Source: Macrostomum lignano
Lineage: Eukaryota
Reading direction: 5' to 3'
DNA: 64,000 bases
Assembly: GCA_002269645.1 (NCBI GenBank)
Contig: NIVC01000566.1
Location: 62,001-126,000 of the forward strand
In this document: positions 36,135-56,388 of the stretch, in pieces
Numbering within the stretch: position 1 is the first letter of the stretch
Layout of the letters: the number at the start of each line of letters is the position of its first letter
Made by a program: the position numbers and the translations under genes
The notes under the pieces: generated by a model
The model's database searches: none
What the model saw: only the letters and a program-made list of their open reading frames with translations
What the model was told of the DNA's origin: nothing

Positions 36135-37477
36135 TCAGAAAATGGCATGCAGACTGTAGTGGAAGAGCGAACAGCGGTTAAAATACCTTGAAATAAGCTC
36201 AAGTACATCTACGGAAAGTAGAATCGCAGTTTTTGACAGCCATTCCTGCTTCATCTGGTGCCGGGAGAGCGACAGCCGCACTGAGATGTTTGTGTACAGA
36301 GGCATCGCCTGGCGACTGACGATCGTGTACGATTCCTTTCTGAGCGCGTTCAGCCCGTCCTCATAGTGCCTGGCCCGCCAGGCCATAAAGTGCGTGTACC
36401 CGCCCTCGATGCGGACGGCCTTGGGGTGGCGCACCATCTTGTAGCGACCGAGGGTGAGCGGCGGACGGGACACCAGCATGCCGGCCTCCATCGTGCGGGC
36501 GCTGATGTCGTCGTCCTCGTTGCCCCAGCCCCAGTACACGTTGGAGAAGCCGTTGATGCGGAAGAAGTTCTTGCTGCTCATCGCTGCACACGACCGATGG
36601 GAAGAGAACTGGTTTTAATCCCGCTTACTAACAACACGTCAAACGATACATATCGGCATAGCTACTCACCCAGCACAGCGCCGAGGTAGTTGTAGAACAT
36701 CACGTGATACCGCATCTCGTCAATGGCGGATGCCAGGTGCCTGGCGTTCTCATCGCACAGGTACACATTCCGATCGTGCTCGGGAATCATGTCCACATCG
36801 TGGAAGATGAAGCAGTCAAAGCTGGCCAGCTTCAGGGCCTCCACCACGCCAACATTTATCAGCATGCCTCGGTTGAAGGGCTCTGGTCCTGTCTGGGTGA
36901 TGCGGCAGAGAGGATTTTAAAAGCTGCCTCTTTACCTGCTTAACTCACCGCTCACCTGCTGAACTGCTGAACTTACTTCTTAACTCTTAACTTCATTGCT
37001 CACCTGCTCAACCACAAACACAGTGTACTTGATCAGCTGCCTTCTCAGCATCCGATGCAGCCGGTTCAGCAGCAGCCGTAAGTGAAAGTCCCGATTCCTG
37101 AAGGCCACCATTACGGCTACGTGTTGCAGTGGGGTGCAGTTTGATGGAGCCCAGCTTCCGCCAGGACGCAACCTCATTTGTGTCGGAACTTCGGGACCAG
37201 CCAGAGCAGTCTCAAGATGATGCAGCTCTGGTGCATTATGCATATCTATTGGCTGCAGCTGCAGACTGTCCCGCCGCAGGTAACAGCGGCCCGACTTCAG
37301 CCTTGAGTCGTCGGCTGGCCAGTCTTCAATGAAGACGTCCGGCTGCGAGTAGCGGCACCTGCTGCTGTAGTTGAAGAGGGCGAACACCCACAAGCACAGG
37401 TACAGGCACAGCAGCAGGTAGCGGCCCGCGACAGACATGTGCCTGCTGACGCGTATCGGGTACCCGCGGCAGAACAT
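36135..37477 (-). CDS. GT7 beta-1,4-galactosyltransferase-like protein, copy A (~381 aa, 3 exons)
   Basis: Exons 37477-37004, 36892-36670, 36583-36135. Type II TM segment LLLCLYLCLWVFALF, VAFRNR, PFNRGML, DxD motif FHDVD, NGFSNVYWGWGNEDDD, YKMVRH. Confidence 0.9.
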
Positions 37478-38691
37478 GGCGAGGGTAAAGAGCTTCGCTT
37501 GCCTTGCAGCACGACAAGGGCTGAGTTCAGCTTCGTTTTCTGAATGTTTGGATGGGGGGCATTGGCTACACATCAGATCCAGTACACAGGTGCGTACATG
37601 TACTTTACCTTTGTCTGTCAATTTTTGTGCTGCCACAAGGATACAGGATAACTTACTGTTCCTCACCTCTCAGACAGGAGACAAGACGCCAGCTTTGCCT
37701 CCAGACTTTCGCAAAGATAGATTTAGTTATATAGATTCGCTTAGTATTCAACGGATAACTTGTTGAAAAATGGGCAGCAAAAAGTTTGGCATCTCTGCAT
37801 GCTGTCATGCGTACATTAGACTTACCTGCCTTGCACACGGTCAACTCGAATAGAAAATACGATCTCGGTTTTGAAGCGCTATATGGAAAGACGGGGCCGT
37901 TGTTTCTTCTGTTTCTTTTTAAATAAAAATATAGTTTTACAGTTGCAATTGTGAGGCTACGGACCAATAAGAGAGCTCTGTTTCATCAATGGGAGACAGG
38001 CAGTGCATTCTGCTAGACGCTTCTAAACATGCCGAGCCTTGTGTGGGCCGTTGCAAGAAGCAAGCTGACAAAAAGACTCATGCGACAGAAATGTTTTGAA
38101 TCGCGTCAAACCATTGCGAGGCATCGAGCTATCGAACAGATATGTAGAAAGCTTGAAATACTGCTGCTGTGCAGAGAGAACAGAGCAGAATTATTGAAAT
38201 AATTGAAGCATATGCAAAAAGAGGTGCCGCGTGCACCGAACGGGATGATGGTACGAGTAGAATTCAAAATTGGTACCAGAAAGGCTATAAACAACATTTT
38301 CATTTAAAGTTTAATTCGGCTATTTAGAATGACCATATACGCTTGTATAGCTTCTCAAGTTATATTTGGAGTGCAAAATATCACTTAATTGGATATTTAA
38401 AATTTAAGGTTTTTATGACAGCCGGCACTGTGCCAGGTGCCTTCAGTAGGATACTCGTACATGTTAGATGTACGCGTATAAGCGATGGGCTACTTGCGAG
38501 TAAGCATACGTAGAAGCGATTTTGAAGTATTTGATACACAATGCAAAGAGCCATGTATTGTTTGTCTAAAGATTTTTTGTTTCACACGTATAATTGTATA
38601 ATTTTCAATAAAAAAGTTTCTTAATTGAAGCGTTCATTTACAGGCTGAGCAAAGCTGTTTAGGCCTGATATGAACTTTGATATTAACAGTA

Positions 38692-40382
38692 GAACTACCA
38701 AGAGAGGGGGGGAATTTCCACCCCCCTGACAATTTTTTGCTGCACCGGAACGGAGCAACGCAGGCACACGAAATTCGAGAACACGGGCTAGCTTTTTGTT
38801 GCGCACATTCTCAAACAAGAATCAAGTCGCCCCAGCCCTCCGGACCGTCGAGATATTCGACGATTCTGCTAGAAGGTCGGATTTTTCCCATAAGCGCTAT
38901 AGTGTATTCAGTACACCCCTGTGCGCCAATCAGCACTGCGCCTCAGTGCAGCCTTGCCAAGTCTCCAAATTTCATCAGCACGTCAACCACATGTGTCTGC
39001 ATCAGCTCTGACTTCGTTGGTCACTAGCCTTCTCCCAGGCGGAGCTTCTGGACCTTCAACGGGTGGCACGAGGTGACTAGCTCGTATGAACACCCTGATG
39101 CGAATTTCTCTAGTTTCGCCGATCAGGCCTCGACCTCGACAGTGAGAAAGCCTCAACTGCTGGACATCCTCAGCTAGTCTCTCAAGCATTCCATCATCAC
39201 CCCGACGCCATCGGCACTTTCAACAGATTACACCAGGTGATTATGAACATCCTGTTGCAAATATGTTAGATTGTTCTAATCAATCTTCAATAATGGGCAA
39301 ACCTCTACTGGTAGGTATCCTCAACTAGTTTTTCAAGCATCCGGTTGTCATTCTGCCGTCGTCGGCACCTTCAAGGAGACGAAACCGACTATAAACACCC
39401 AAAAGAGATGATTTTTTTATTTTAAACAATTTTAGCAACTTTTAGGACAGAAGACTAGAGATTCAGTATATTATGAATTGATATTCATTCCACACAGAAA
39501 ATTGGATAATTTCTAGTATTTTTTTCTTCGCGAAGATTCTGTTCAATTTACAGTGTAATTAACAAATTACGTCATCACGTTTACTTAATCATGTCTGGTG
39601 ATGATAGACTATTTGAGAGTCTAGTTGAGAACGACCAGAAATGAAAGTTTGTCCATTATTGATGCTGGTGAGCGACATCAAAGAAATTCACAACAGCGTG
39701 TCTATAGTCACCTGGTGTCATCTGTTGAAGGAGCCGACGGCGTCGGGGTGGTGACGGAATGCTCGAGAGACTAGCTGAGGATGTCCAGCAGTTGAGGCTT
39801 TCCCACTGTCGAGGCTTGATCGGCGAAACTATAGAAATTCGCATCAAGGTGTCCATAGTCACCTGCTGTAATCTGTTGAAGGTGCCGACGGCGTCCGGGT
39901 GATGACGGAATGCTCGAGAGACTAGCTGAGGATACCTAGCAGTTGAATTTTGCCCACTGTCGAGGCTTGATCAGCAAAACTCTAGAAATTCGCATCAGGG
40001 TGTTCATAGTCACGTGGTGCCACCTGTTGAAGGTCTAGAAGCTCCGTCTCGGTGAAGGCCAGTGACTAACGAAGCCAGAGCTGATGCAGACACATGTGGT
40101 CGACGTGCTGATAAAATTTGGAGGCTTGGCAAGGCTGCACTGAGGCGCAGTGCTGATTGGCGCACAGGGGTGTACTGAATACACTAGCGCTTATGGGAAA
40201 AATCCGACCTTCTAGCAGAATCGTCGAATATCTCGACGGTCCGGAGGGCTGGCGACTTGATTCTTGTTTGAGAATGTGCGCAACAAAAAGTTAGCCCGTG
40301 TTCTCGAATTCCGTGTGCCTGCGTTGCTCCGTTCCGGCGCAGCAAAAAAATTGTCTGGGGGGATTCCCCCTCTTGGTAGTTC
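38692..40382. mobile_element. Foldback-like element with ~550-bp inverted arms and internal ~152-bp subrepeats
   Basis: 38692-39245 is the reverse complement of ~39850-40382 at high identity; 39700-39850 duplicates 39850-40005; no TSD seen. Confidence 0.75.
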
Positions 40383-40679
40383 GACGGGCGGAAAAGTGGC
40401 TTGGCATTCCTGCTGTTGAATAGACCATCAATTTGAAGAAATAACAAAAATTATCCCTCTGTGTCGATGTGCAGCAGATTCAAAGTTAAGAAAGTACACT
40501 CATAGGCTTAGGAAGGTGTGGACAGTGGGGCCATGCCCCCCACTTTTTAAAATGGGGGGGGCAGTAATGGTATCTGACCCCTCCACATTTTAAATTTAAA
40601 ATGTAGACTTTTTGCTTATTTTTGATTTTTGCTGCTTTGCATGAATGCATTTTGCTGCAGGGCGACAAAACAGCGCCTT

Positions 40680-40860
40680 CAGCGCCAAAATGAGTGCCTG
40701 CGGCGCTAAAATGAGTGCATGCGACGCTAAAATGAGTGCATGCGACGCTAAAATGAGTGCATGCGACGCTAAAATGAGTGCATGCGACGCTAAAATGAGT
40801 GCATGCGACGCTAAAATGAGTGCCTGAATGAGTGCCTGCGGCGCTAAAATGAGTGCTGAC
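40680..40860. repeat. 21-bp minisatellite (gcgacgctaaaatgagtgcat)
   Basis: About 8 copies. Confidence 0.93.
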
Positions 40861-40995
40861 AAGACGGATTCTGAAAATAATCGCTACATGATAATGTGCA
40901 TTTTCCATATATAAAAATCTAACTCGATGGGGGCGTGCGCCCTGCCCTATGCGCCCCCCCCCCTAATCCGCCACTGGACCTGGTGAAGTGACACA

Positions 40996-41061
40996 GTCTA
41001 GCGGTTAGGATTCCTGGCTCTCACCCAGGCGGCCCGGGTTCGACTCCCAGTCAGGGAACCA
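40996..41061 (+). pseudogene. tRNA-Glu(CTC) pseudogene lacking the 5' acceptor strand, with genomic CCA
   Basis: D arm GTCTAGCGGTTAGGAT, anticodon arm CCTGG-CTCTCAC-CCAGG, T arm CCGGG-TTCGACT-CCCAG, 3' strand TCAGGGA-A-CCA. The upstream bases (agtgaca) cannot pair with TCAGGGA. Confidence 0.8.
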
Positions 41062-43059
41062 GTGAAATATTTTAAATAAGATGTTGGTATTATCGTTCTT
41101 CTGGTCCGTCACTTGTATGGCTCTATGTCTACTTCAAATATCAATGTGAGAGCCAAATAACTAGCTGAGGCGGCGGATTCAACTGACTTTTCCTGATGAT
41201 GCAAACACTTGATGGTAACTTACAGACTGTTGTATTTGATGGTCACAATCTGTTATGTTATCTTACAAAGTATAATGTCTAAGATGGAGTTCCAAATAAG
41301 AAGCTCAATTGATTCAAGTTACAATGGGTTCTGGTTGTTTGGGTGAACCGAAGGTTCAGTCTATTGTGGAGCTAAGGAAAAAGGAGGCGAGCTTCTTGCT
41401 TGGTTGACATGGGCTTTTATAGTACTTTTCAGTCTTCATTGGTCGTGTCCTCAGCTTGCTATTTGGAGCGCATTCATTGGTTAAAATACATTCAATCTGG
41501 ATGGGAACTTTTTGGACCAAAATGTGTCACTTCATTGGCCCCCCACTTTTTGAAACTTTCCTACGCCTATGAGTACATTTAAAGTTCGGCCTTTAAATAA
41601 TATTCCATTAAACTCGAATAGTTTACGGCCTTATACAACGGTACCACCACTCCTAGAGGTCCTAGCTCAGACTGCGACGGTTGTGGTAATTAGGTTTAGG
41701 TTGGGTTATTAAGATTGATAGTCAATTTGTGGCAGACAAAAGTCGTGGACCTAGTTCAAAACCAACACTGCGCACACACTGTTCAAGCAGAAATTCAAAC
41801 GTGTGGTAAGCTACCATGCAGAGAAGCTCACAGGCCAGTAGCCGGGTTAAAGAGTCCGACTCGAGGGTTAAAGCAACACAATCAAGCCCCGGAGTGCCGG
41901 CCAACCTCCAAGACAGAGAGTGTGTCGTGAGCTGCGCTTCACAGTGCCCTTGCCCCGACCCTTGCGCTCCACCTCTCCTCTCCCTGCAACTTGATCATTC
42001 TGGTCTGCCTTCCCCCTGTCTTCAGCCACCATTCTTGTTTATCATTTTAGTTTTCTCGTAGTTTTACTTTCATTGGCTGTCTGTCCCCGTTTAGTTTCTC
42101 TTTCGTTTGGGCCAGTCCAATCATGTCCCCGCGGAGGCACCTGATTGGCTAGCCTTCCCCCTCTTTTTTTTCTATCGTCCTTCAACTGAGTTTTGCCCCC
42201 CTCCCCAGCCCTTGTGTGGCTTAGCGGCCCTTAGCCCCAACCCAGCCCCCTGCTCTCTATCCCACCATGTACAGTATCTAGGTGCGTGCACGGCCCACGC
42301 CCGGCTTTCGTGCTAGCCTACTCTCCCCGCTAGCCCTTCAAGTACTTGTGAAAATCATTGAAAGTGATGAAATACGCGCAATCGTTCGTGAGCTCATCGA
42401 GTTAGCCTCTCCCGGTAAGATAGTCTTTACTTCTCATTTATTTCTCATCCTCTTTTAAATTCTTTCCTCCAGTCGCAGTCTTCACTAGAGTCTGCGAAGT
42501 GTCTGCGTGCCTCCAGGCCCGTGTTCACCTCTCTGGTGCTGCTGAGTGGCTACATGATCGCAGCCTCATCAATCATCATTCGCATCTCCCTCGCGAGAGC
42601 TGGACGAATTTCTGTACGCCTCAGGGGTCGCCGCTCTCCTTCCTATCACACTCGGCAAGCTCTGGGCAGTCCAGTACCCGAACCCAAACCACCCGGTCTT
42701 CGGTCTGCACGGACAAAAGCAGAAAATACAACACGTGTACCATGCCTGACAATCGATGAGAAAGTCAGGGCCTCTACACCCTGAGTGAGTGCTTAGGAGT
42801 CAGCGGAATTGTGCCAGACAGTAACTGCGAGACACTTTGCAGGGTGGTTTTCGGATCCAGGCGCATTCGTCAGAAGCATAATGGCTCTGGATGTCGCAAC
42901 TTTCTAAGTCGTCTGGTCATCTCTCCAGTTAAACTGCCTCGTCCGGTCGTCCCTCTGTTTACTGCTTCCCTCTGTCCAGTTCAATCTTTCTTTTCTCTCT
43001 CCCTCTTGCTCACTTCTGATTTGCAATTCAATTTTACCCTCTTTCCTCAGTCGTGCTCT

Positions 43060-43715
43060 TACCCTCATTATCTGCGCCCAACCCCCCTCAGTATCTGCGC
43101 CCAAACCCCCTCATTATCTGCGTCCAACCCCCTCCTTATCTGCGCCCAACCCCCCTCATTATCTGCGCCCAACCCCCTCAGTATCTGCGCCCAACCCCCT
43201 CCTTAACTGCGCCCAACCCCCCTCATTATCTGCGCCCAACCCCCCTCATTATCTGCGCCCAACCCCCCTCCTTAACTGCGCCCAACCCCCCTCATTATCT
43301 GCGCCCAACCCCCCTCATTATCTGCGCCCAACCCCCCTCATTATCTGCGTCCAACCCCCTCCTTATCTGCGCCCAACCCCCCTCAGTATCTGCGTCCAAC
43401 CCCCTCCTTATCTGCGCCCAACCCCCCTCCTTATCTGCGTCCAACCCCCCTCCTTATCTGCGCCCAACCCCCCTCATTATCTGCGTCCAACCCCCCTCCT
43501 TATCTGCGCCCAACCCCCCTCCTTATCTGCGCCCAACCCCCCTCCTTATCTGCGCCCAACCCCCCTCCTTATCTGCGCCCAACCCACCTCCTTATCTGCG
43601 CCCAACCCACCTCCTTATCTGCGCCCAACCCCCTTATCTGCGCCCAACCCCCTCCTTATCTGCGCCCAACCCCCCTCCTTATCTGCGCCCAACCCCCCTC
43701 CTTATCTGCGCCCCC
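43060..43715. repeat. 23-24 bp minisatellite (cccctccttatctgcgcccaacc)
   Basis: About 28 copies. Confidence 0.95.
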
Positions 43716-44264
43716 GATAAGCGATGAACAAAGAAGCGATGTCCAGCAAAGCAAGGTTTTTTAATTCTTTTAACAATTACATAAGCTGAGTAATTTCATA
43801 AAACTGTGAACTAAACATCAATATGACATTGAAGCGTCAAGAAATCATTTATATTTAAACAATTTAATTTATTAATAGTAGTATAGCGCCGACATTGCAG
43901 TAAAATACATAGAAAAAACTACCAATTCAGGGAAGCGAAAAGCCTAAAATAATATTGCGATTTGACGAACTGAGCACCAGGGATAAGTAATCAATAATAT
44001 TACTTACTCGCATTAACTGGAGAGTCAAAGCTGAGCGAAACAAAAAATGGAATATAATTCCGATTGCAATTGGAGCTATAGTACATCAAAGGTAGGTTTA
44101 TATAATAATACTTCAATATGGGCAGCTCTCGGTGGAAGAATTCAGCATTCAGTTTTATGACTATACAGGCTGCGAGTTGCGCTGACTGCGGTTGGTCCGT
44201 TTCGGACTCTCTGGAGTGGATTAAGACAGATTTTATCAGTAATTTAGAGGCGATTCTCAGATGG

Positions 44265-44400
44265 GTCTGATGGGCGATTCACATGTGAGGCTGATGGGCG
44301 ATTCTCAGGTGAGGCTGATGGGCGATTCTCATGTGAGGCTGATGGGCGATTCTCATGTGAGGCTGATGGGCGATTCTCAGGTGGGGCTGATGGGCGACTC
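44265..44400. repeat. 24-bp minisatellite (ggcgattctcaggtgaggctgatg)
   Basis: About 6 copies. Confidence 0.9.
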
Positions 44401-44508
44401 ACCCGCGTGATTGGGGCGCTACGCTCGTAATGCAGTTGCTAAGAGCGAATGCCTCTTGGCTGGACCGCTGCGCCAAAAGCTCAACTCGACAGGGTCAAAA
44501 AGGGCGGC

Positions 44509-45848
44509 CTATGGATAGTAGAATCGCAGAAACCACCATACGGAGTCCGAGTTGGACAGCCACTCGGGCGTTATTCGATGCCGCTGGCGGGACAGCCGCA
44601 CGGAGATGTTTGTGTACAAAGGCATCGCCTGGCGACTCAGCACTGAGTACGAGGCCCTGCTCAGCGCGTTCAGCCCGTCCTCATAGTGCCTGGCCCGCCA
44701 GGCCATGAAGTACTCGTTGCCGCTCTCGATGCGGACGGCCTTGGGGTGGCGCACCATCTTGTAGCGGCCGAGGGTGGGCGGCGGACGGGACACCAGCATG
44801 CCGGCCTCCATCGTGCGGGCGCTGATGTCGTCGTCCTCGTTGCCCCAGCCCCAGTACACGTTGGAGAAGCCGTTGATGCGGAAGAAGTTCTTGCTGCTCA
44901 TCGCTGCACACGACCGATGGGAAGAGAACTGGTTTTAATCCCGCTTACTAACAACACGTCAAACGATACATATCGGCATAGCTACTCACCCAGCACAGCG
45001 CCGAGGTAGTTGTAGAACATCACGTGATACCGCATCTCGTCAATGGCGGATGCCAGGTGCCTGGCGTTCTCATCGCACAGGTACACATTCCGATCGTGCT
45101 CGGGAATCATGTCCACATCGTGGAAGATGAAGCAGTCAAAGCTGGCCAGCTTCAGGGCCTCCACCACGCCAACGTTCATCAGCATGCCTCGGTTGAAGGG
45201 CTCCGGTCCGGTCTGGGTGATGGGGCACAGAGGCTGGGTAGATTTTAGAAGCTGCCTCTATCTGCTTAAGTCTGTTTACGTGCTGAAACACAGTGCTCAA
45301 CTGCCTGCTCACCTGCTCAATTCACAGCTCACTGCTCAACTCACTGCTTAACTGCCTGCTCAACTGCTCAAGTTACTGCTTAACGCATTACTCACCTGCT
45401 CAACCACAAACACAGTGTACTTGATCAGCTGCCTTCTCAGCATCCGATGCAGCCGGTTCAGCAGCAGCCGCAAGTGAAAGTCCCGATTCCTGAAGGCCAC
45501 CATCACGGCTACGTGTTGCAGTGGGGTGCAGTTTGATGGAGCCCAGCTTCCGCCAGGACGCAACCTCATCTGTGCCGGAACTTCGGGACCAGCCAGAGCA
45601 GTCTCTAGATGATGCAGCTCAGGTGCATTATGCATATCTATTGGCTGCAGCTGGAGGCTGTCCCGCCGCAGGTAACAGCGGCCCGACTTCAGCCTTGAGT
45701 CGTCGGCTGGCCAGTCTTCAATGAAGACGTCCGGCTGCGAGTAGCGGCACCTGCTGCTGTAGTTGAAGAGGGCGAACACCCACAGGCACAGGTACAGGCA
45801 CAGCAGCAGGTAGCGGCCCGCGACAGACATGTGCCAGCAGACGCGCAT
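44509..45848 (-). CDS. GT7 beta-1,4-galactosyltransferase-like protein, copy B (~350-356 aa, 3 exons)
   Basis: Exons 45848 (or 45830)-45396, 45212-44990, 44903-44509; same motifs as copy A. Confidence 0.9.
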
Positions 45849-46094
45849 CGGGAAGCGGCGGCCCTGCCAGCGTCTGTTGGTGGGGACAAAATAGAGAGTA
45901 GGGATATCGGGTCTCAGCTGCTTTGCTTGCCGCCTCTTGTAATCAAGTCCTCTATGCATGGCCCAAACTGAATACAGGTGGATGCCGGAGACTTAGCCTA
46001 ATATTCTGCCATGCAAGAGGATTGTAACAGAATTTTGATTCAAGGCCTGCTTAAACTACAGCATAATTCTAGAAATCTCCCAACTTCTGTCCCA

Positions 46095-47825
46095 TTGATG
46101 TGTGTCTCAGTGATCAGTGATGTGTGTCTCAGTGATCAATGATGGGTGTCTCAGTGATCAATGAAGGGTGTCTTAATGATGGGTGTCTCAGCGATCAGTG
46201 ATGTGTGTCTCAGTGATCAATGATGGGTGTCTCAGTGATCAATGAAGGGTGTCTTAATGATGGGTGTCTCAGCGATCAGTGATGTGTGTCTCAGTGATCA
46301 ATGATGGGTGTCTCAGTGATCAATGATGGGTGTCTCAATGATCGGTGTCTCAGTAATCAATGATGGGTGTCTCAGCGATGGGTGCCTCAGCAATGTGTCT
46401 CAGTGATGGGTGTCTCAGTGATCAATGATAGGTGTCTCTGTGATCAATGATGGGTGTCTCTGTGATCAATGATGGGTGTCTCTGTGATCAATGATGGGTG
46501 TCTCTGTGATCAATGATGGGTGTCTCTGTGATCAATGATGGGTGTCTCAATGATAGGTGTCTCTGTGATCAATGATGGGTGTCTCAGTGATGGTGCCTCA
46601 GCGATGTGTGTCTCAGTGATGGGTTTCCAGTGATGGGTGATGTGTGTCTCAGTGATGGGTGTCTCAGTGATAAATGATGTGTGTCTCAGTGATGGGTGTC
46701 TCAGTGATGGGTGTCTCAGTGATGGGTGTCTCAGTGATGGGTTTCCAGTGATTTGTGTCTCAGTGATGTGTCTCAGTGATGGGTGTCTTAATGATGGGTG
46801 TCTCAGTGATGGTGCCTCAGCGATGTGTGTCTCAGTGATGGGTTTCCAGTGATGGGTGATGTGTGTCTCTAGCGATAAATGATGTGTGTCTCAGTGATGT
46901 GTCTCAGTGATGGGTTTCCAGTGATTGGTGTCTCAGTGATTAATGATGGGTGTCTCAATGATGGGTGTCTCAATTATGGGTGTCTCAGTGATGGGTGTCT
47001 TAATGATGGGTGTCTTAATGATGGGTGTCTCAGTGATGGTGCCTCAGCGATGTGTGTCTCAGTGATGGGTTTCCAGTGATGGGTGGCTCAGTGATGGGTT
47101 TCCAGTGATGGGTGTCTCAGTGATGGGTTTCCAGTGATGGGTGTCTCAGTGATTAATGATGGGTGTCTCAATGATGGGTGTCTCAATTATGGGTGTCTCA
47201 GTGATGGGTGTCTCAGTGATCAGTGATGGATGTCTCAGTGATGGGTTTCCAGTGATGGGTGTCTCATTGATGGGTGTCTCAGTGATGGGTGTCTCAGTGA
47301 TCAGTGATGGGTGTCTCAGTGATGGGTGTCTCAGTGATGGTGCCTCAGCGATGTGTGTCTCAGTGATGGGTTTCCAGTGATGGGTGGCTCAGTGATGGGT
47401 TTCCAGTGATGGGTGTCTCAGTGATGGGTTTCCAGTGATGGGTGTCTCAGTGATTAATGATGGGTGTCTCAATTATGGGTGTCTCAGTGATGGGTGTCTC
47501 AGTGATCAGTGATGGATGTCTCAGTGATGGGTTTCCAGTGATGGGTGTCTCAGTGATGGGTGTCTCATTGATGGGTGTCTCAGTGATGGGTGTCTCAGTG
47601 ATCAGTGATGGGTGTCTCAGTGATGGGTGTCTCAGTGATGGGTGTCTCAGTGATGGGTGCCTCGGTGATGTGTCTCAGTGATGGGTGTCTCAGTGATGGG
47701 TGTCTCAGTGATGGGTGCCTCGGTGATGTGTCTCAGTGATGGGTGCCTCAGTGATGGGTGTCTCAGTGATGGGTGCCTCGGTGATGTGTCTCAGTGATGG
47801 GTTTCCAGTGATGGGTGTCTCAGTG
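46095..47825. repeat. 15-bp-based minisatellite (gtgatgggtgtctca) with higher-order blocks
   Basis: Direct reading; a ~300-bp block repeats (about 47030-47330 and 47330-47630). Confidence 0.95.
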
Positions 47826-49321
47826 AGTAGCAGGGTTGTTCATATTTTGCAAAGGTTTAGCTTTTAAATCGTCACCCTTATTTTTACTCCCAATGGCAAG
47901 AAACTCAAGATGAAGTGAATTGAAATTAATTTAGGGTTGACTCCACGCGACGTAAGTTTAAAATGCAAAATGCTGATTAAAACGGTCCCCGAGGCCCTGT
48001 TTTAGTGACAACCTTTTAGTTTTACATTACAGTTGTCATATTTGCTTATTAGAGTAAAAATTCTATTGTCACTGTTGTCTACTGATTACTAATGCATGCA
48101 GTAAGTTATATTTAGCATCATAACTTTAGATGATCTTAATTACAATCACAATGCACTAATATATTCTAATAAAAACAACTATTTGAACTCTCACGAATGG
48201 CGTCATCAAATGTTTAGCTTATCATTATTATTTTTATCATTAGCGATACACTAACGAAATATTACTCAATAATATCCAAGCATAGCCGTCATGGAGCAGA
48301 ATTTAATGCTTGTCACTAAATGGGCCGTTTTTTAACACAATTTTGCATGTTAAAATTATGTTGCATTGAGCGACCTGATGTGAAATCTCAGAGAGACAAA
48401 TTCTAACCTGCAGAAACTGTCAATTTGCTGGAAGTTGCTATGAGAATTTATTTTAACCACCTCACAACAACTGATTCATCCCAGTTGAATACGCTCGTAA
48501 AGGAGCTAGGGAAGCCCGAACAAAAATGACAGGTCAACAACAAACACCGAACGCACATTTCATAGCAGTCCGGTTATAAATAGAGTAGTATAATGTGTAC
48601 TTTTTCACAATTGTAAAAGACAGAAGCCAGTGTTGACTAGCTGATACATTTTGAGAGATTCAAGAAGTAAACTAATAATAATTAAGTAAATACGAGCTAT
48701 TATTAATCAATAATTGTAACAGGGTTTGAGATCGCGGCGAATTCCATAGTCGCATTATATTGCTGAAAAAATCATGAAATCGAAAACGTAAAGACTGAAT
48801 TGCACAATGATTTTTTGCATCTAATTATAAAGATATTTTGAGTAGAATTTGGATCACAGAAATGCAAACCAACCGAAGCAAGGGAACTCGAATTGCACAG
48901 CAAACAACTCTGCTTTCAGTATTAAACAGAAGGCTTAAACTGATGGTCAGAATGAAATTTTCCATAGAAAACAAATCTGTAAATACAAATCCAGGCTGAA
49001 AACGCGAAACTGACTACTCATACCGACAATTTGGATATGAAAAAGTAAATATGCACACCCAATGACCTTGCTGGTAAAAATATGCTAAAATAAATAATAA
49101 TAATTGACTACACCTGCCCTAATGGCCAGATGTGCAAACGACAGCTCAGCCGCAGCTATTGCGCGGCGCATCTGAAGGCTGCGTCCAGCTGTTCAGTCCA
49201 AGGACTGGGGGTCGCTACACAGCCTCAATTACCCCAGCTAATGCTGGCACCCATTTTACTGCTGGGTGAACTGAAGCAATGCAGAGTTAAGTGTCAGGCT
49301 CAAGGACACAAATTGTTCTAG

Positions 49322-49406
49322 TGGGATTGGGAATCGAACCCCCGACCGTCGTTTTCTCGTTTTCTAGTCGTGAGTGCGACGCTCTCACCACTAGACTACA
49401 AGCCCC
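49322..49406 (-). pseudogene. Degenerate tRNA-like sequence (tRNA pseudogene or SINE head)
   Basis: Minus strand has A-box-like TAGTCTAGTGG and B-box GGTTCGATTCC, but the anticodon arm and variable region are irregular. Confidence 0.5.
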
Positions 49407-49554
49407 AGTTAAAAATGTTAAAAATTAAAAAAAGACTTGAAAACGCGGTGTACGTACGAAGTTATGTAAGATTAGGTTCTGTCAATCAGACAGGCTATGC
49501 AAGTTGCGGCCTGTGCAGAAAGTTAGCCAATTCTTTAAACCCAAGAGTTTAGGG

Positions 49555-50870
49555 GCGGGGCGGCCCAGCAACTGACACTCTGGGAGGCTGGCCCAGCAGC
49601 AACTGAGGATCTGAGAGGCTGGCCCAGCAACTGAGGATCCAAGAGGCTGGCCCAGCAACTGAGGATCTGAGAGGCTGGCCCAGCAACTGAGGATCTGAGA
49701 GGCTGGCCCAGCAACTGAGGATCTGGGAGGCTGGCCCAGCAACTGAGGATCTGGCAGGCTGGCCCAGCAGCAACTGAGGATCTGAGAGGCTGGTCCAGCA
49801 ACTGAGGATCTGAGAGGCTGGCCCAGCAACTGAGGATCTGGGAAGCTGGCCCAGAAACTGAGGATCTGAGAGGCTGGCCCAGCAACTGAGGATCTGAGAG
49901 GCTGGCCCAGCAACTGAGGATCTGAGAGGCTGGCCCAGCAACTGAGGATCTGGGAAGCTGGCCCAGAAACTGAGAATCTGAGAGGCTGGCCCAGAAACTG
50001 AGGATCTAAGAGGCTGGCCCAGCAACTGACACTCTAGGAGGCTGGCCCAGCAACCGCAAGGATCTGGGAGGCTGGCCCAGCAACCGCAAGGATCTAGAAG
50101 GCTGGCTCAGCAACTGACACTCTGGGATGCTGGCCCAGCAACTAAGAATCTGGGAGGCTGGCCCAGCAACTGACACTCTGGGAGGCTGGCCCAGCAACTG
50201 AGGATCTGGGAGGCAGGCCCAGCAACTGACACTCTGGGAGGCTGGCCCAGCAACTGAGGACCTGGGAGGCAGGCCCAGCAACTGACACTCTGGGAGGCTG
50301 GCCCAGCAACTGACACTCTGGGAGGCTGGCCCAGCAACTGAGGATCTGGGAGGCAGGCCCAGCAACTGAGGATCTGAGAGGCTGGCCCAGCAACTGAGAA
50401 TCTGAGAGGCTGGCCCAGAAACTGAGGATCTAAGAGGCTGGCCCAGCAACTGACACTCTAGGAGGCTGGCCCAGCAACTGACACTCTAGGAGGCTGGCCC
50501 AGCAACTGACACTCTAGGAGGCTGGCCCAGCAACTGACACTCTAGGAGGCTGGCCCAGCAACTGACACTCTAGGAGGCTGGCCCAGCAACCGCAAGGATC
50601 TGGGAGGCTGGCCCAGCAACCGCAAGGATCTGGGAGGCTGGCCCAGCAACCGCAAGGATCTAGAAGGCTGGCCCAGCAACCGCAAGGATCTGGGAGGCTG
50701 GCCCAGCAACTGAGGATTTAGGAGGCTGGCTCAGCAACTGAGGATCTGGGAGGCTGACCCAGCAACTGACACTCTGGGAGGCTGGCCTAGCAACTGAGGA
50801 TTTGGGAGGCTGGTTCAGCAACTGAGAATCTGGGAAGCTGACCCAACAACTGACACTCTGGGAGGCTTAG
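49555..50870. repeat. 28-bp minisatellite (gaggctggcccagcaactgaggatctga)
   Basis: About 46 copies with three recurring internal variants. Confidence 0.96.
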
Positions 50871-51167
50871 TGTCCAAGCAAACGAGGATTTGTGAGCAGG
50901 TGGCATAACCCCACTAAGGTAACTACGTCAGCTAGTGACCACCCAAAAATAATACCAGTATTATATACAAAGATAAACCAAGACAGATTTCACAGATCCA
51001 CAAGGCCAACAAAGCCTATAAGCTCTGTCCTCCGACCCCAGCGAAACTCAAAACACAGAAAAGCCCAATAACAGCAGAACTACGTCGCGAATGTGATAGA
51101 AGCTCTCTCGAGTCGCCCAACACTGCAAGCCAGCAAGCAGGCCAAGACCAGCACAGCACACGCAGCC

Positions 51168-52929
51168 TCAGAGATAATAGAAGCCCAGAAACCACCAGAT
51201 GGAGGCCGGCTTGGCTTGCCACTCGGGCAGCATCCGGTGCTGGCTGGCGTTGAGCTGCACAGTCAGGCGGGTGCACAGCGGCTGCCTGTCAATCAGGCGC
51301 AGCGAGTACGAGCCCGAACCCAGCGAGCTCACGCCGTCTTCGAACTGGCGAGCGCGCCAGTGCCGGAACTGGCTGTAGGCCGACTCGATGCGGACGGCCT
51401 TGGGGTGGCGCACCATCTTGTAGCGACCGAGGGTGAGCGGCGGACGGGACACCAGCATGCCGGCCTCCATCGTGCGGGCGCTGATGTCGTCGTCCTCGTT
51501 GCCCCAGCCCCAGTACACATTGGAGAAGCCGTTGATGCGGAAGAAGTTCTTGCTGCTCATCGCTGCACACGACCGATGGGAAGAGAACTGGTTTTAATCC
51601 CGCTTACTAACAACACGTCAAACGATACATATCGGCATAGCTACTCACCCAGCACAGCGCCGAGGTAGTTGTAGAACATCACGTGATACCGCATCTCGTC
51701 AATGGCGGATGCCAGGTGCCTGGCGTTCTCATCGCACAGGTACACATTCCGATCGTGCTCGGGAATCATGTCCACATCGTGGAAGATGAAGCAGTCAAAG
51801 CTGGCCAGCTTCAGGGCCTCCACCACGCCAACGTTCATCAGCATGCCTCGGTTGAAGGGCTCCGGTCCGGTCTGGGTGATGGGGCACAGAGGCTGGGTAG
51901 ATTTTAGAAGCTGCCTCTATCTGCTTAAGTCTGTTTACGTGCTGAAACACAGTGCTCAACTGCCTGCTCACCTGCTCAATTCACAGCTCACTGCTCAACT
52001 AACTGCTCAACACACTGCTCAACTAACTGCTTACCTGCTCAACTAACTGCTTACCTGCTCAACTCACTGCTTACCTGCTCAACTAACTGCTTACCTGCTC
52101 AACTAACTGCTTACCTGCTCAACTCACTGCTTACCTGCTCAACTAACTGCTTACCTGCTCAACTCACTGCTTACCTGCTCAACTAACTGCTTACCTGCTC
52201 AACTAACTGCTTACCTGCTCAACTAACTGCTTACCTCCTCAACTCACTGCTTACCTGCTCAACTAACTGCTTACCTCCTCAACTCACTGCTTACCTGCTT
52301 AACACACTGCTCAACTCACTGCTTACCTGCTCAACTCACTGCTTACCTGCTCAACACACTGCTCAACTAACTGCTCAACTCACTGCTCAACTGCTTAACT
52401 AACAGCTCACTGCTTAACTGCCTGCTCAAATGACTGCTCAACTGCTTAAGTTACTGCTTAACGCATTGCTCACCTGCTCAACCACAAACACAGTGTACTT
52501 CATCAGCTGCCTTCTCAGCATCCGATGCAGCCGGTTCAGCAGCAGCCGCAAGTGAAAGTCCCGATTCCTGAAGGCCACCATCACGGCTACGTGTTGCAGT
52601 GGGGTGCAGTTTGATGGAGCCCAGCTTCCGCCAGGACGCAACCTCATTTGTGTCGGAACTTCGGGACCAGCCAGAGCAGTCTCCAGATGATGCAGCTCAG
52701 GTGCATGTTGCAGATCCAGCGGCTGCAGCTGCAGACTGTCCCGCCGCAGATAGCAGCGACCCGACTTCAGCCTGGAGTCGTCGGCTGGCCAGTCTTCAAT
52801 GAAGACGTCCGGCTGCGAGTAGCGGCACCTGCTGCTGTAGTTGAAGAGGGCGAACACCCACAGGCACAGGTACAGGCACAGCAGCAGGTAGCGGCCCGCG
52901 ACTGGCACCTGTCTGTACAGGCGGTACAT
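51168..52929 (-). CDS. GT7 beta-1,4-galactosyltransferase-like protein, copy C (~357 aa, 3 exons)
   Basis: Exons 52929-52474, 51871-51649, 51562-51168; same catalytic motifs; divergent C-terminal ~70 aa. Confidence 0.9.
51960..52460. repeat. 20-bp minisatellite (ctgcttacctgctcaactaa) in intron 1 of GT7 copy C
   Basis: About 16 near-perfect units at 52021-52360 with degenerate flanks. Confidence 0.95.
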
Positions 52930-53949
52930 CAGCGGCCGGCTGGAATAAAAATAGTTTCAATGTGCTGCAAAACTACTTATCTAATGGAATATTGAAGTAG
53001 TTAGTTCGGGTTTAAGCGTTAAAATAATATTTACAAACTCTTTTGACCTTTAGACTGCCAACAACGGAATGAACGAACGCAACACAGTAGACCAATTAAA
53101 ATACAGTAAGCTAACATCTTTAATACATTGTTACTAAGCATATTTGTATGTTGTATTTGCCAGGATAATTAAACAGGTTAAGCAAGAAAAGACAATAACT
53201 ATTATTAGACCCTGTTTACATTATCAACACACTACTTAACTGTCTAGTAGCAATAGTAGCATCTTGGATGAAGTGTGTGGAAACATGGAGGTGAAAAATA
53301 AATTTTACAAGCGTCAAGCCTTCAGCCTAACAGAAATCTGCGGTGTTGCAACAGAATTTACCGAATATTATTAAACACAGGACTGACAGGACTGACAGCA
53401 ATTACAGGACACGCAGAACAATCACGAAGACTAATATTAGCAGTTGTTATGCACTCGGTGAAAGATTTTTTTGCGTCCAATCTTGTACCGAGATAATAGG
53501 TTGCCATTTTTTACCACAAAAATTGTCATTCCTTGCGATATAAGGAAGGCCTAATCTTCATCTTTTGATATGTCTTGCCTTCTTATAGCTCTATTGACAT
53601 TCATAAAACTTTTCATGATTTTTAGGCACGGTACAGTAGGCACGTAGTTTTCCGTCCTACTTGAGTAGTCCTTGGACTGACTATTGCCAGCGTCTGCCCC
53701 TGACTGACCTTTCTAAGATAGAAAGTCATCTGCTTATTATTCTAAGACAGCAAATTTTGAATTAGCGCGCAAAAAACTTGTTTAACTGAGCGTAAAGGAG
53801 TTACAGAATAGGTCAGAACAGGTGAAAGTGCAACGGCGAGAATGCCACAACTATCAGTGTGACGGGGCGGGAGAAAGAGACGCCACAGAAATGCCATCAG
53901 CCGGTCCCTCAGAGGGGGGCGCATCCGCTAGTCCACTATACTAAAAAAA

Positions 53950-56388
53950 TCAGCGCCCGCCACTCTGGTTCAGCGAGTACGTGCACTCGGCATTCACTGT
54001 GGTCTTCTTTATCGCCTGCCTCTCGAACATGCCAGTCAGAGCGGCCGCCAGCGCCTGGCACAGCACCGACTTGTTGGTCTCCTTGTACTTTTTATATTTG
54101 CTGCGCAGCTTCTTGGACAGCTCGGCCAGCGTCATCGGCCGCCTGCCCAGGTAGTGCCGAATCAACGACTCGTCGATCAGGTTGGCCGCCTGGCCAGCCG
54201 AAGCTGACGACGTCTTCTGGCGCTTGGCTGGCGGCCCGTCAGAGACTGCCTCCCCACCCAGCTGCGCCTTCTCCTTGATGCGCTTCACCAGCGCCTCGCG
54301 CCTCTCCGTCTCCTTAGCCGGGGAAGGCTGCTTAGCTTTCTTGTGCTTCTTCTTTTTCTTATGTTGCTGCTTTTTCTCCTTCTTGGAAGTTTTTCTGTCC
54401 GAGGAGTCGTCGGAGCCGCTGCCGCCGCCGCCGCCGCTGCTGTCGCTGTCCTCCTCGTCCTCGCCGTCTTCCCCGTCATCCTCATCGGCGCCTTTGCCGA
54501 CAGACTTGCTCGGCTTGCTCCCGGCCGCCGACTTCTTGCTGGTCGACGCGTCATTCTCGGCACCGTTTTTCTCACCGTCGGCACCGGCGGCGGCACCGCC
54601 CTCGGTCTCGCTCTCCTCTTCGTCGGACACCAGCAGGCCCTTCATGGCGTCCTCCTGGTCCAGGCCCTTCTCCTCGTAGATGTCCACCTTCTCAGACTCG
54701 GACACGCTGCCAGAGCTGCTGTGGGTCAGGTAGTCCAGCTCGTCGCCCTCGTGATCGTCCAGCTCCGACTCGTCTTCGACTTCGCCGTCCGGGTCACGCT
54801 CGCCGCCGCCTTCGTCCTCGCTGCCAGGCTGGCCCTCTTTTCGCTTGCGCTTGAACCGCGGCGCCCGACGCTTGCCGCGCCCACCGCCGGCAGCGCCTCC
54901 TTTCTTTGACGACGAAGCGGCCGGGCCGGCGCTCCGGCCGCCGGACTTCGAGGTGGCCGCCGTTCCCCCGTCGCGATCGTCAGCGTCGGCTTCGTCCGAA
55001 TCGCCGGCCTCGTCGCCGAATTCGTCCATGTCGGTCAGCTGCAGACGCGACCGACGCGACGATCGGCCGCCGCCACCGCCGCCGTCTCCCCGGTCTAGAT
55101 CCTCGCCGTCGTCGCCATCCTTGTCGCCGGCCGACTTCTCCTCGCCTCCGCCCTCGTCCTTGGCGTTGAGACGGTGCCGCAGCATCAGGTTGTACTTGTT
55201 GAGCGTCTTGTCCCGCTTGTTGAACTCCTCCTCCGCCTCCTCCGAGTTGAAGTGCCGGTAGGCCACGTCAGGCACGAACTTGTAGAAGTCGTCCGCGGGC
55301 AGAGCCTCGAAGGTGTTGTTGGCTTCGCTCTTCATGAACACCCAGTAGGCGGCGTTGGCCGTGATGCCGCCCTCGCGCGAGCCTTTGAACTTTTTGGCGG
55401 CATCGCGACCTGAGCCGGTGAAGGACAGCTGCATCGGCTGGTTGAAGGGGTTGAACCGGCTGCAAGGCGGGGGCGAGGGCAGCGGCTGGTATAGACCAAA
55501 ATATACATGGATCGAGATGGACACCCTAGACAGTTAAATAAAATACGGATAAACACTTAAGATGGACAGATACGAGCGTAGACACCATTCAAAAAAAGCA
55601 AACGGACACCCTCCAATTCAACATTGCAGACGGACACCCTCCCATCCAACACTGCAGATGGACACCTCATTAAAACCGGCGGACACCCCAGCCAGACGAG
55701 CGGACACCCGCAGATCTCACCGAAGCGCCCCGGCGTGTTTCCGCTTCTTGGCCTCGTCCCGTTCGGCCTGTCTGTAGGCGCTGCCCTCGCCGTACATCGG
55801 GCGCTGCTGCTGGCTGGGATTCTCGGCCTCAGCGGCTGCCGCGGCTGCCGCTGCAACGGCGGTGGGCAGGCGGCCGAACCTGCCAAGTCGCTGCAGGCTG
55901 GCCTCTGTGGCGGTGGACAAATCCGGCACCTGCGAGCTGCTGAAGCTCAGCACGCTCAGCCGTCTTAGCGAGGTGTTGCTAGGCACGATAATGCGGTACT
56001 GGTACTGAGGCGGGGCCTGACTCTGCACAGATGATGAAGCGGCTGCCTGAGACTGCTGCTGAGCAGTCGCTCTCTGCAGCTGGTAGAACTGCGGCTGCTG
56101 CGATGAGCCAAGCCGGATGACTTGCTGTTGCTGCTGCAGCAGCTGCGGCCGCACACCAGCAACTGAGGTGGCGCCACCGCCTGGCGGCATAATGGCAACC
56201 GGGATGGCGCCAGTGGCGGTGGCGCCTGGCAGTGCGGGCGAAACGCGGATCATCTGGCCGGCCGTCGATGCCGGTGGGCCACGCGGCAGCAGCAGGCGGG
56301 TGACGCCGGGCGCGCCGGGGGCGCCAGCGGGCGGGCCGGGCTGGAAGCTCACGATGCCGCGCGGCTGCTGCTGCTGCTGCTGATTTGC
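53950..56388 (-). CDS. GTF2F1: Transcription factor IIF large subunit (RAP74); first exon not located
   Basis: Exons 56388-55721 and 55459-53950 join in frame. RAP74-like YRIIVP...MYGEGSAY...EAKKRK, KKFKGSREGGITANAAYWVF...FEALPADDFYKF...EEAEEEF, an acidic/charged middle and a C-terminal winged-helix-like IRHYLGRRPMT. Confidence 0.9.

What the first reader, a model, noticed from the sequence alone, without database searches (positions are those of the whole stretch)
36135..52929. Three GT7 glycosyltransferase paralogues: homogenised catalytic core, divergent acceptor-loop and C-terminus
Seen: the 86-bp intron 2 is identical in all three copies and most of exon 2 to RHPKAVRIE is near-identical, with shared variants switching partners (C=B at the start of exon 2, C=A in parts of exons 1 and 3). 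Immediately after RHPKAVRIE they diverge: GGYTHFMAW (A), SGNEYFMAW (B), SAYSQFRHW (C). Established: in beta4GalT1 the long flexible loop after the metal-binding His forms the acceptor site. Inference: gene conversion keeps the donor/catalytic half uniform while acceptor specificity diversifies, a compact glycan-diversifying cassette.
Basis: partly seen in the sequence, partly recalled or inferred. Interest (0 to 1): 0.7.

Follow-up and report, generated by a model that had tools for sequence, protein, structure and literature searches.

The report
Flatworm glycosyltransferase triplet homogenised by gene conversion
Three neighbouring flatworm genes for a sugar-adding Golgi enzyme keep most of their sequence nearly identical by copying from one another, and differ only at their ends; this is a clean but ordinary case of partial gene conversion, and whether the different ends change what the enzymes act on is untested.

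Summary
The window is Macrostomum lignano. It holds three minus-strand, three-exon GT7 (beta4GalT-like) genes: A 36135-37438, B 44509-45830, C 51168-52929. Intron 2 (86 nt) is identical in all three and lies in a 314-column invariant run. Similarity starts about 6-27 nt after the start codon and collapses exactly after RHPKAVRIE.

Gene conversion is strongly supported. Synonymous divergence is 0.06-0.08 in the core, 0.46-1.0 in the tail and about 0.55-0.61 to an outgroup cDNA. A diverged homeologous locus in the same assembly carries the same C-B-A triplet. There, tails and flanks group by orthology (90 and 42 sites against 0), while intron 2 groups by locus (6 columns plus indels against 0).

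The tail begins in the C-terminal half of the B4GalT1 long flexible loop, where the acceptor site forms.

"Acceptor diversification" is not shown. Tail dN/dS is below 1. The sharp boundary may simply reflect the homology that conversion needs. Copy A carries a frameshifting 20-nt deletion, the homeologous C has a dead splice donor, and a second contig has C's body replaced by B.

This is a new member of a known kind, of moderate interest.

The parts
36135..37438 (-). Gene A (GT7 beta4-glycosyltransferase-like). Exon 1 37004-37438, intron 1 36893-37003 (111 nt), exon 2 36670-36892, intron 2 36584-36669 (86 nt), exon 3 36135-36583. 368 aa as it stands, with a frameshifted C-terminus. An upstream in-frame ATG (MFCRGYPIRVSRH-) is the likelier true start.
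   Evidence: The start extension matches P0002.
44509..45830 (-). Gene B. Exon 1 45396-45830, intron 1 45213-45395 (183 nt), exon 2 44990-45212, intron 2 44904-44989 (86 nt), exon 3 44509-44903. 350 aa, intact. Its tail is the most like the outgroup and the wider family.
   Evidence: (100% to P0001).
51168..52929 (-). Gene C. Exon 1 52474-52929, intron 1 51872-52473 (602 nt), exon 2 51649-51871, intron 2 51563-51648 (86 nt), exon 3 51168-51562. 357 aa, intact. It has the most divergent tail.
   Evidence: (P0005).
36405..37432 (-). Homogenised block of A, from GTCGCGGGCC (codon 3) to the last base of the RHPKAVRIE codons.
44725..45824 (-). Homogenised block of B.
51384..52902 (-). Homogenised block of C. 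It is longer only because of the intron 1 minisatellite.
36135..36404 (-). Unconverted tail of A: the second half of the flexible loop, the C-terminal helix and strands, and the frameshifted end.
44509..44724 (-). Unconverted tail of B (71 codons plus stop). It includes the conserved C-terminal WWFLRFYYP helix.
51168..51383 (-). Unconverted tail of C (71 codons plus stop). 40 of 71 residues differ from B, but 13 of 16 family-conserved positions are kept.
36228..36229 (-). Junction of the 20-nt deletion in A, relative to B, C and A2. It shifts the frame after EWLSKT and removes the conserved DSVWWFLRFYYP end.
   Evidence: The same frameshifted tail appears in UniProt model P0003.
51953..52419 (-). 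20-nt minisatellite (about 23.5 copies) that expands C's intron 1.
37439..37700 (-). Private 5' flank of A. The flanks of B (45831-46100) and C (52930-53200) are likewise private. They cannot be aligned between paralogues but are conserved with the orthologous copy at the homeologous locus.

Best explanation
The locus is an old tandem triplication of a lophotrochozoan-type GT7 beta-1,4-glycosyltransferase gene in Macrostomum lignano. The encoded proteins are type II Golgi enzymes with the B4GalT1 fold. The triplet evolves by partial concerted evolution.

Shown:
- The three genes exchange sequence by interlocus (non-allelic) gene conversion across a block of 1.0-1.5 kb. The block runs from just after the start codon to the codon after RHPKAVRIE.
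- The exchange happened repeatedly, both before and after the M. lignano subgenomes separated.
- The promoters and 5' ends, and the last 71 codons plus the 3' flanks, have not been exchanged in this locus. They retain deep, orthology-consistent divergence.

Inferred:
- All three proteins share every donor, metal and catalytic residue: DVD, Met/His, WGWGNEDDD, and Tyr at the position of bovine Tyr289. They should therefore use the same nucleotide sugar, probably UDP-Gal.
- They differ in three ways: the cytoplasmic N-terminus and promoter; the C-terminal half of the lid loop, which in B4GalT1 builds the acceptor pocket (equivalents of R359, D361 and R362 differ, F360 is kept); and the surface of the C-terminal strands.
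- Some difference in acceptor preference or regulation is therefore plausible, especially for C.
- The sharpness of the boundary is most simply mechanical. Conversion needs homology, so once the tails had diverged, tracts stopped at the edge of the homologous block and the edge became self-reinforcing. Selection for distinct tails may add to this, but it is not required by the data.

The system is also eroding under polyploid redundancy. A here is frameshifted, C2 has lost a splice donor, and C1 has been overwritten by B.
For: - GT7 identity.
- Organism and family context.
- Core versus tail dS: 0.06-0.08 against 0.46-1.02, and 0.55-0.61 from core to the outgroup. Fisher p = 7e-6 to 9e-12.
- Breakpoints fall exactly after the RIE codon (p <= 0.0005). 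The mosaic of partitions has p = 5e-5. A 314-column invariant run includes the whole of intron 2.
- Homeologous locus L005 has the same C-B-A order.
- Site partitions: tail 90 orthology to 0 locus; 5' flank 42 to 0; intron 2 0 orthology to 6 locus columns plus shared indels, about 4 mutational events.
- Pairwise quartets show B/C locus-grouping from 3' intron 1 through intron 2, and small A/B and A/C patches in exon 1.
- Loop mapping: alignment, PMC4202792, and the AF2 model with a lower-confidence loop at residues 270-280 followed by helices.
- Scaffold residues are retained in all tails: 3 of 16 conserved positions changed against 37 of 55 variable ones, p = 0.001.
- C versus C2 tail: 3 differences, all synonymous.
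Against: - Everything rests on one Canu assembly of a repeat-rich neopolyploid, polished with short reads by Pilon. Only about 64% of its bases were judged error-free by REAPR, and no reads could be inspected.
- No GC-bias signature of conversion is present.
- The outgroup cDNA's species is unknown, and only one such sequence exists.
- Conversion is not absolutely excluded from the tail: on contig L001 a tract identical to B replaces C's tail and about 1.27 kb of its 3' flank, though its 3' junction has only about 10 nt of microhomology.
- There are no enzymatic or copy-specific expression data. Annotated models in this cluster are chimeric.
Confidence: 0.8

Rival explanations
1. Selection actively protects the tails from conversion because they encode different acceptor specificities. 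Conversion acts as a 'constant region' homogeniser for the donor and catalytic half. The result is a glycan-diversifying cassette.
For: - The boundary sits inside the acceptor-forming half of the lid loop (PMC4202792).
- The tails are old, yet keep the scaffold residues.
- The C and C2 tails differ only synonymously.
- The three tail types are conserved between homeologous loci.
- dN/dS is higher in C's tail (0.6-0.8) than for B versus outgroup (0.20).
Against: - dN/dS never exceeds 1, and C's acceleration is not significant (22 versus 12 changes, p = 0.12).
- The boundary equals the edge of homology, which is expected mechanically.
- The 5' boundary is equally sharp and lies at the promoter and N-terminus, not at any acceptor element.
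- L001 shows C's tail overwritten by B.
- A is frameshifted and C2 is splice-dead.
- No C-type tail was found outside M. lignano.
Confidence: 0.3
2. Assembly or polishing artefact. The identical cores arise from collapsed or mis-polished paralogues (Pilon with multi-mapping short reads), or the contig is chimeric.
For: - Mlig_3_7 was Pilon-polished with Illumina and RNA-seq reads and is acknowledged to be error-prone (PMC10733133).
- 93% of read pairs multi-map.
- The L001 hybrid has a non-homologous 3' junction.
Against: - Many paralogue-specific SNPs survive within 100-300 nt of one another inside the core.
- The two loci keep different intron 2 variants, each shared by its own three copies. 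Genome-wide consensus polishing would not produce that.
- Each gene has long unique flanks that long reads would anchor.
- The same triplet order is seen on an independent, diverged contig.
- ML2-derived UniProt models, built from the same reads with a different assembler, show the same A frameshift and the C-start/B-body hybrid.
Confidence: 0.07
3. Recent triplication followed by very fast adaptive divergence of the tails, with no conversion.
For: The cores are nearly identical, and the tail of C shows raised dN/dS.
Against: - Tail synonymous divergence is 0.46-1.0, as large as or larger than to the outgroup.
- The flanks cannot be aligned.
- The tails are orthologous between homeologous loci, while intron 2 groups by locus.
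- The mosaic of switching partners needs recombination.
Confidence: 0.02

Closest known systems
Vertebrate beta-1,4-galactosyltransferase 1 (B4GALT1; PDB 1o0r, 1nf5, 2ae7, 6fwt)
   Same: Same fold: TM 0.94, rmsd 1.3-1.6 A to the closed forms. 36-38% identity. DVD motif, Met/His metal ligands, WGWG-x-EDDD loop, four cysteines, Tyr at the Tyr289 position, and a lid loop after the His.
   Different: Three residues are missing in the second half of the lid loop. There is an extra, lophotrochozoan-conserved C-terminal helix (WWFLxFYxP) that B4GALT1 lacks. Donor and acceptor are unknown. Vertebrate B4GALT paralogues are dispersed rather than a converting tandem array (own knowledge).
Partial interlocus gene conversion between tandem paralogues (for example RHD/RHCE, red/green opsins, fetal globins; own knowledge)
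   Same: Homogenised blocks that include introns and synonymous sites, sharp tract edges, mosaic partner switching, and unconverted segments that carry the functional differences.
   Different: Here the evidence includes a within-genome replicate: homeologous triplets in a neopolyploid. The gene family is GT7, for which I found no such report.
UGT1A and GCNT2 variable-first-exon clusters (PMC1885805)
   Same: The outcome is a set of glycosyltransferases with an identical donor-binding part and different acceptor-side parts, encoded in one compact locus.
   Different: In those clusters uniformity comes from physically shared constant exons and alternative first exons, and that paper found no prevalent gene conversion. 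Here each gene is complete and uniformity comes from conversion. The variable part is C-terminal and only 71 residues long. Its effect on the acceptor is unproven.
Invertebrate GT7 enzymes with altered donors (Drosophila and C. elegans beta4GalNAcT/BRE-4; Lymnaea beta4GlcNAcT; own knowledge)
   Same: Same family, and lineage-specific expansions. BRE-4-like proteins appear among the more distant hits.
   Different: In those enzymes the donor switch maps to the Tyr289 position, inside what is the homogenised core here. All three copies here have Tyr, so donor diversification is not expected.

Membership tests
CAZy GT7 / beta4GalT-like | Glyco_transf_7N and Glyco_transf_7C domains above the gathering score | tested here: met
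   7N at 151-152 bits (cut-off 27) and 7C at 84 bits (cut-off 23), in A, B and C.
CAZy GT7 / beta4GalT-like | DXD (DVD) motif, Met/His metal ligands, and WGWG-x-EDDD loop with the catalytic Asp | tested here: met
   FHDVDMIP, YKMVRH and YWGWGNEDDD align to bovine D252-D254, M344/H347 and W312-D320. These are identical in all three copies.
CAZy GT7 / beta4GalT-like | GT-A fold superposable on B4GalT1, and four conserved cysteines | tested here: met
   pLDDT 92.9; TM 0.94 to 1o0r_A; invariant C52, C101, C172 and C191.
CAZy GT7 / beta4GalT-like | Type II membrane topology (short cytoplasmic tail, one N-terminal transmembrane helix) | tested here: met
   The sequence YLLLCLYLCLWVFALF forms helix 3-22 in the model. 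Topology itself is inferred.
CAZy GT7 / beta4GalT-like | Transfers a beta1,4-linked hexose from a UDP-sugar; donor identity | not testable with these tools
   Tyr at the bovine Tyr289 position suggests UDP-Gal, from published mutagenesis (own knowledge).
Concerted evolution by interlocus gene conversion | Paralogues at one locus share derived variants that the orthologous copies at another locus lack | tested here: met
   in intron 2, 6 columns plus indels group ABC against A2B2C2, with 0 supporting orthology. B and C also group by locus from intron 1 to intron 2.
Concerted evolution by interlocus gene conversion | Adjacent segments of the same genes give conflicting genealogies | tested here: met
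   Tail and flanks: 90 and 42 sites for orthology, 0 for locus. Core: (A,B,C) against the outgroup. Tail: C lies outside (A,B,outgroup).
Concerted evolution by interlocus gene conversion | Homogeneity extends to synonymous sites and introns, so it is not explained by protein constraint | tested here: met
   Intron 2 is identical. Core dS is 0.06-0.08 against 0.46-1.02 in the tail.
Concerted evolution by interlocus gene conversion | Significant spatial clustering of differences and tracts | tested here: met
   maximum chi-square p <= 0.0005; partition clustering p = 5e-5; invariant run p = 5e-5.
Concerted evolution by interlocus gene conversion | Sequences verified as separate physical copies (spanning reads) | not testable with these tools
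   Only assemblies are available.
Adaptive diversification of an acceptor-binding module | The divergent segment maps to acceptor-contacting structure | tested here: met
   the tail starts at bovine residue 355 of the 345-365 loop and covers the equivalents of R359-I363. PMC4202792 supports the role of this region.
Adaptive diversification of an acceptor-binding module | Excess of non-synonymous change (dN/dS above 1), or a significant rate acceleration | tested here: not met
   dN/dS is 0.37-0.77. C versus B is not different from 1 (p = 0.38), and the relative-rate test gives p = 0.12.
Adaptive diversification of an acceptor-binding module | The enzymes differ in acceptor specificity | not testable with these tools
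   This needs recombinant enzymes and acceptor panels.

The most novel reading that the evidence does not exclude
The conversion boundary is held in place by selection. Gene conversion then serves as a 'constant region' for donor chemistry. The 71-residue tails (lid-loop C-half, C-terminal strands, WWFLxFYxP helix) together with private promoters act as 'variable regions', giving three enzymes with distinct acceptor specificities. This would be a conversion-based functional analogue of the shared-exon UGT1A design, in a GT-A fold enzyme.
Probability: 0.22. Interest if true: 0.6.

Novelty: new member of a known kind. Interest (0 to 1): 0.36.

Why it matters
The locus is a compact and unusually well-controlled example of partial concerted evolution. 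The neopolyploid genome supplies a diverged replicate of the same triplet. Conversion after the subgenome split can therefore be read directly from locus-specific shared variants, rather than inferred from similarity alone.

It also sets up a natural tail-swap experiment for GT7 enzymology. The three proteins are almost identical over about 280 residues and differ in the last 71. Any difference in acceptor use would map at once to the second half of the lid loop and the C-terminal elements, including a lophotrochozoan-specific C-terminal helix of unknown role.

Practically, the locus shows that gene models here are unreliable. Several deposited proteins are chimeras of two or three of these genes. 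Copy number and integrity also differ between subgenome copies.

Tried and rejected
- Searched for C-type tails elsewhere. The word-indexed search found no candidates. The exhaustive representative search returned only generic GT7 at 35-38% identity and repeat proteins. The age of the C type outside M. lignano therefore remains unknown.
- Tried to fetch DNA for the UniProt ML2 models P0002 and P0003. They are not on record.
- Looked for a GC-biased conversion signature. Core and tail GC are similar at 0.56-0.66, so there is none.
- Ran a relative-rate test for acceleration of C's tail. There is a trend only: 22 versus 12 changes, p = 0.12.
- Looked for an A copy on L001. It is out of reach: homology to the window ends at window position 39020, and a retrotransposon follows.
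- Considered annotated BOX15 proteins as evidence for copy-specific expression. I rejected this because P0123 is a hybrid of C2, B2 and A2, and multi-mapping is rife.
- Considered unequal crossing-over for the L001 hybrid. I rejected it because the contig returns to C's own 3' flank after the B-type segment, so the event is a patch rather than a deletion or duplication product.
- The species of the outgroup cDNA (Logan run SRR28338165) could not be determined with the tools.
Full report
**What is there**

The window is from the flatworm Macrostomum lignano. Copy B's product is 100% identical to GenBank protein BOX15_Mlig001508g4, and the window equals part of contig NIVC01000566.1 of assembly GCA_002269645.1.

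A repeat scan finds three direct copies at about 36.2-37.4, 44.5-45.8 and 51.2-52.9 kb. A tblastn search finds no further copy in the window.

All three genes lie on the minus strand and have three exons with GT..AG introns in phases 0 and 1:
- A: 36135-37438
- B: 44509-45830
- C: 51168-52929

A cDNA contig from another public run (L003/P0004, 86% identical) is colinear with the spliced models. That supports the intron positions.

Each product hits Pfam Glyco_transf_7N and 7C far above threshold. Each matches B4GalT1 chains at about 1e-58.

An AlphaFold model of B has pLDDT 92.9. It superposes on closed, substrate-bound B4GalT1 with TM 0.94 and rmsd 1.3-1.6 A.

The following are present and identical in all three copies:
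- the DVD motif
- the Met/His metal ligands
- WGWGNEDDD
- four cysteines
- Tyr at the position of bovine Tyr289

**Check of the observation**

Every descriptive statement holds.
- Intron 2 is 86 nt and identical in the three copies.
- It lies in a 314-column stretch without a single variable site (p = 5e-5 by permutation).
- Similarity begins at GTCGCGGGCC, a few codons into the coding sequence. Upstream of that, the three flanks cannot be aligned.
- Similarity ends on the last base of the RHPKAVRIE codons. Maximum chi-square breakpoints for A-C and B-C fall on the next base. Differences jump from 4% and 2% to 45% and 44% (p <= 0.0005).
- A and B diverge in patches from the same point. Their best single breakpoint is about 60 nt later.
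- The switching of partners is real and non-random: AB|C sites early in exon 1, AC|B sites in exons 1 and 3a, and a long BC|A run from intron 1 into exon 2 (p = 5e-5).

**Is it gene conversion?**

Three independent lines of evidence say yes.

First, homogeneity extends to sites that protein function does not constrain.
- Intron 2 is identical.
- Synonymous divergence in the 277-codon core is 0.06-0.08 between paralogues.
- In the 57 comparable tail codons it is 0.46 (A-B), 0.81 (B-C) and 1.02 (A-C) (Fisher p = 7e-6 to 9e-12).

Second, genealogies conflict between segments.
- With the L003 cDNA as outgroup, the core groups (A,B,C) far from the outgroup (dS 0.55-0.61).
- In the tail, B is as close to the outgroup (0.49) as to A, and C lies outside all of them.

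Third, and decisively, the same assembly contains a properly diverged homeologous locus. This is L005 (contig NIVC01001294.1), whose flanks are 91-98% identical to the window. It has the same order TFIIF-alpha, C2, B2, A2.

Among the six genes, sites partition as follows:

| Segment | Sites grouping by orthology | Sites grouping by locus |
|---|---|---|
| Tail | 90 | 0 |
| 5' flank | 42 | 0 |
| Intron 2 | 0 | 6 columns plus shared indels |

The intron 2 differences amount to about four mutational events.

Quartet analysis adds detail:
- B and C group by locus from the 3' part of intron 1 through intron 2.
- Small A/B and A/C patches group by locus in exon 1.
- A-specific sites in intron 1 and exon 2, and a C-specific patch in exon 1 (PLDLQH), remain orthology-consistent.

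So the triplication predates the subgenome split. Most homogenisation is about as old as that split. Several tracts are younger.

M. lignano is a neopolyploid with three subgenome copies that differ by 1.4-2.4% in SNPs (PMC10733133). That fits L005.

**A possible very recent event**

A third contig, L001 (NIVC01002009.1), is about 99.9% identical to the window in the flanks.

Its gene in the C position keeps C's private 5' flank and start (MYRLYRQVPVAGRY). From early exon 1 to the stop codon it is identical to B. It then carries about 1.27 kb of B-type 3' flank, which differs from B's own only by indels and within the minisatellites, before returning to C's own 3' flank.

The 3' junction has only about 10 nt of imperfect microhomology. 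If real, this is a one-ended or template-switch repair patch rather than classical two-ended conversion.

UniProt models from the older ML2 assembly show the same C-start/B-body protein and two B-type bodies in tandem (P0003, P0122). However, ML2 and Mlig_3_7 were built from the same PacBio reads. This is support from a second assembler, not from second data.

**State of the copies**
- Copy A in the window has a 20-nt deletion (junction 36228/36229) that frameshifts after EWLSKT.
- This removes the C-terminal DSVWWFLRFYYP. That helix is conserved in nemertean, mollusc and annelid orthologues but absent from vertebrate B4GalT1.
- The same frameshifted tail is present in UniProt model P0003.
- A2 at the homeologous locus is intact.
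- C2 has its intron 2 donor changed from GT to GG. It also has seven private changes in exon 1, at least four of them non-synonymous.
- The C-type protein is found only on the window's contig.
- B-type copies are intact everywhere.

**Does the tail mean acceptor diversification?**

By the HMMER alignment to bovine B4GalT1, the His of RHPKAVRIE is His347. The tail begins at residue 355, inside the 345-365 lid loop. It covers the equivalents of R359 (H, Y and Q in A, B and C), F360 (kept in all), and D361/R362 (MA, MA, RH).

The evolutionary evidence for diversification is weak.
- Tail dN/dS is 0.37 (A-B), 0.61 (A-C), 0.77 (B-C) and 0.20 (B-outgroup).
- C versus B is not distinguishable from 1 (p = 0.38).
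- A relative-rate test gives 22 changes on C against 12 on B (p = 0.12).

C's tail is nevertheless not junk.
- It differs from B at 3 of 16 positions conserved in 30 non-Macrostomum orthologues, against 37 of 55 variable positions (p = 0.001).
- C and C2 tails differ by three changes, all synonymous.

The data fit a functional but relaxed or re-tuned C tail. They do not discriminate between altered acceptor preference and neutral drift at tolerant positions.

The sharp edge needs no selection. Conversion depends on homology and will stop where homology ends. The 5' edge is just as sharp, although nothing acceptor-related lies there.

**Comparison with what is known**

Mechanistically this is ordinary partial concerted evolution between tandem paralogues. 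It works like RHD/RHCE or the opsin arrays (own knowledge).

In outcome it resembles the UGT1A and GCNT2 clusters, where identical donor-binding parts are combined with variable acceptor-side parts. Those use shared exons, and little conversion was found there (PMC1885805).

Species-specific expansion of beta4-galactosyltransferases in flatworms has been noted in a preprint (10.1101/2024.02.05.578899). I found no report of conversion in GT7 or of this locus.

I therefore class the finding as a new member of a known kind.

**Caveats**
- All sequences come from one Canu assembly that was Pilon-polished with multi-mapping short reads and is acknowledged to be error-prone.
- Against an artefact: paralogue-specific SNPs survive inside the core, each locus keeps its own intron 2 variant, and each gene has long unique flanks.
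- Only spanning reads can settle the question.
- Deposited gene models in this cluster (P0003, P0122, P0123, P0124) are chimeras of two or three genes.

Noticed in passing
L001 2418-5026 (contig NIVC01002009.1), corresponding to window 52929-50874: On a near-identical second contig, the gene in the C position has C's promoter and start. Its body and tail are identical to B, followed by ~1.27 kb of B-type 3' flank (differing from B's own flank only by indels and within the minisatellites). The 3' junction with C's flank has only ~10 nt of microhomology. This is either a very recent replacement patch or a mis-join.
   Followed up: partly
L005 10010-11470 (contig NIVC01001294.1): The homeologous copy of C (C2) has its intron 2 donor mutated from GT to GG. 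It also has seven private exon 1 changes, including F to I in the FRNR motif. Its tail protein is identical to C's. It is probably a young pseudogene.
   Followed up: partly
window 36135-36260 (end of gene A); residues 339-350 of B: A C-terminal helix, (D/E)S-x-WWFLxFYxP, is conserved across lophotrochozoan orthologues but absent from vertebrate B4GalT1. It is lost from copy A through the 20-nt deletion. Its function is unknown.
   Followed up: partly
P0003, P0122, P0123, P0124 (UniProt and GenBank models of this cluster): Deposited protein models are fusions of two or three of the paralogues. For example, P0123 combines the C2 start, B2 exon 1 and A2 exons 2-3. Since M. lignano has trans-spliced polycistronic precursors (PMC5730564), co-transcription of the triplet is possible, but artefact is more likely.
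   Followed up: partly
window 38733-40349: An element bounded by ~350-nt inverted repeats (93-100% complementary), with internal 151-nt repeats, lies between B and A. It is also present at the homeologous locus (L005 20082-22446). L001's homology to the window ends inside it.
   Followed up: no
window 22895-25456 (-): An 853-aa ORF carries a protein-primed type B DNA polymerase domain (Pfam DNA_pol_B_2, 4.6e-28). It is probably a fragment of a Polinton/Maverick-like element.
   Followed up: no
window 9036-11366, 19704-20888, 43062-43713, 46088-47826, 49562-50867, 51953-52419 and others: The density of minisatellites is extraordinary: periods of 15-33 nt and up to 117 copies. They fill most intergenic space and expand C's intron 1. 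The intron 1 repeats are built from splice-donor-like GTGAG/GTAAG units.
   Followed up: no
window 53950-55524 (-) and 61627-62607 (-): TFIIF-alpha and a protein kinase lie upstream of C. This synteny is kept on both other contigs, which helped to establish that L005 is a homeologous locus.
   Followed up: yes
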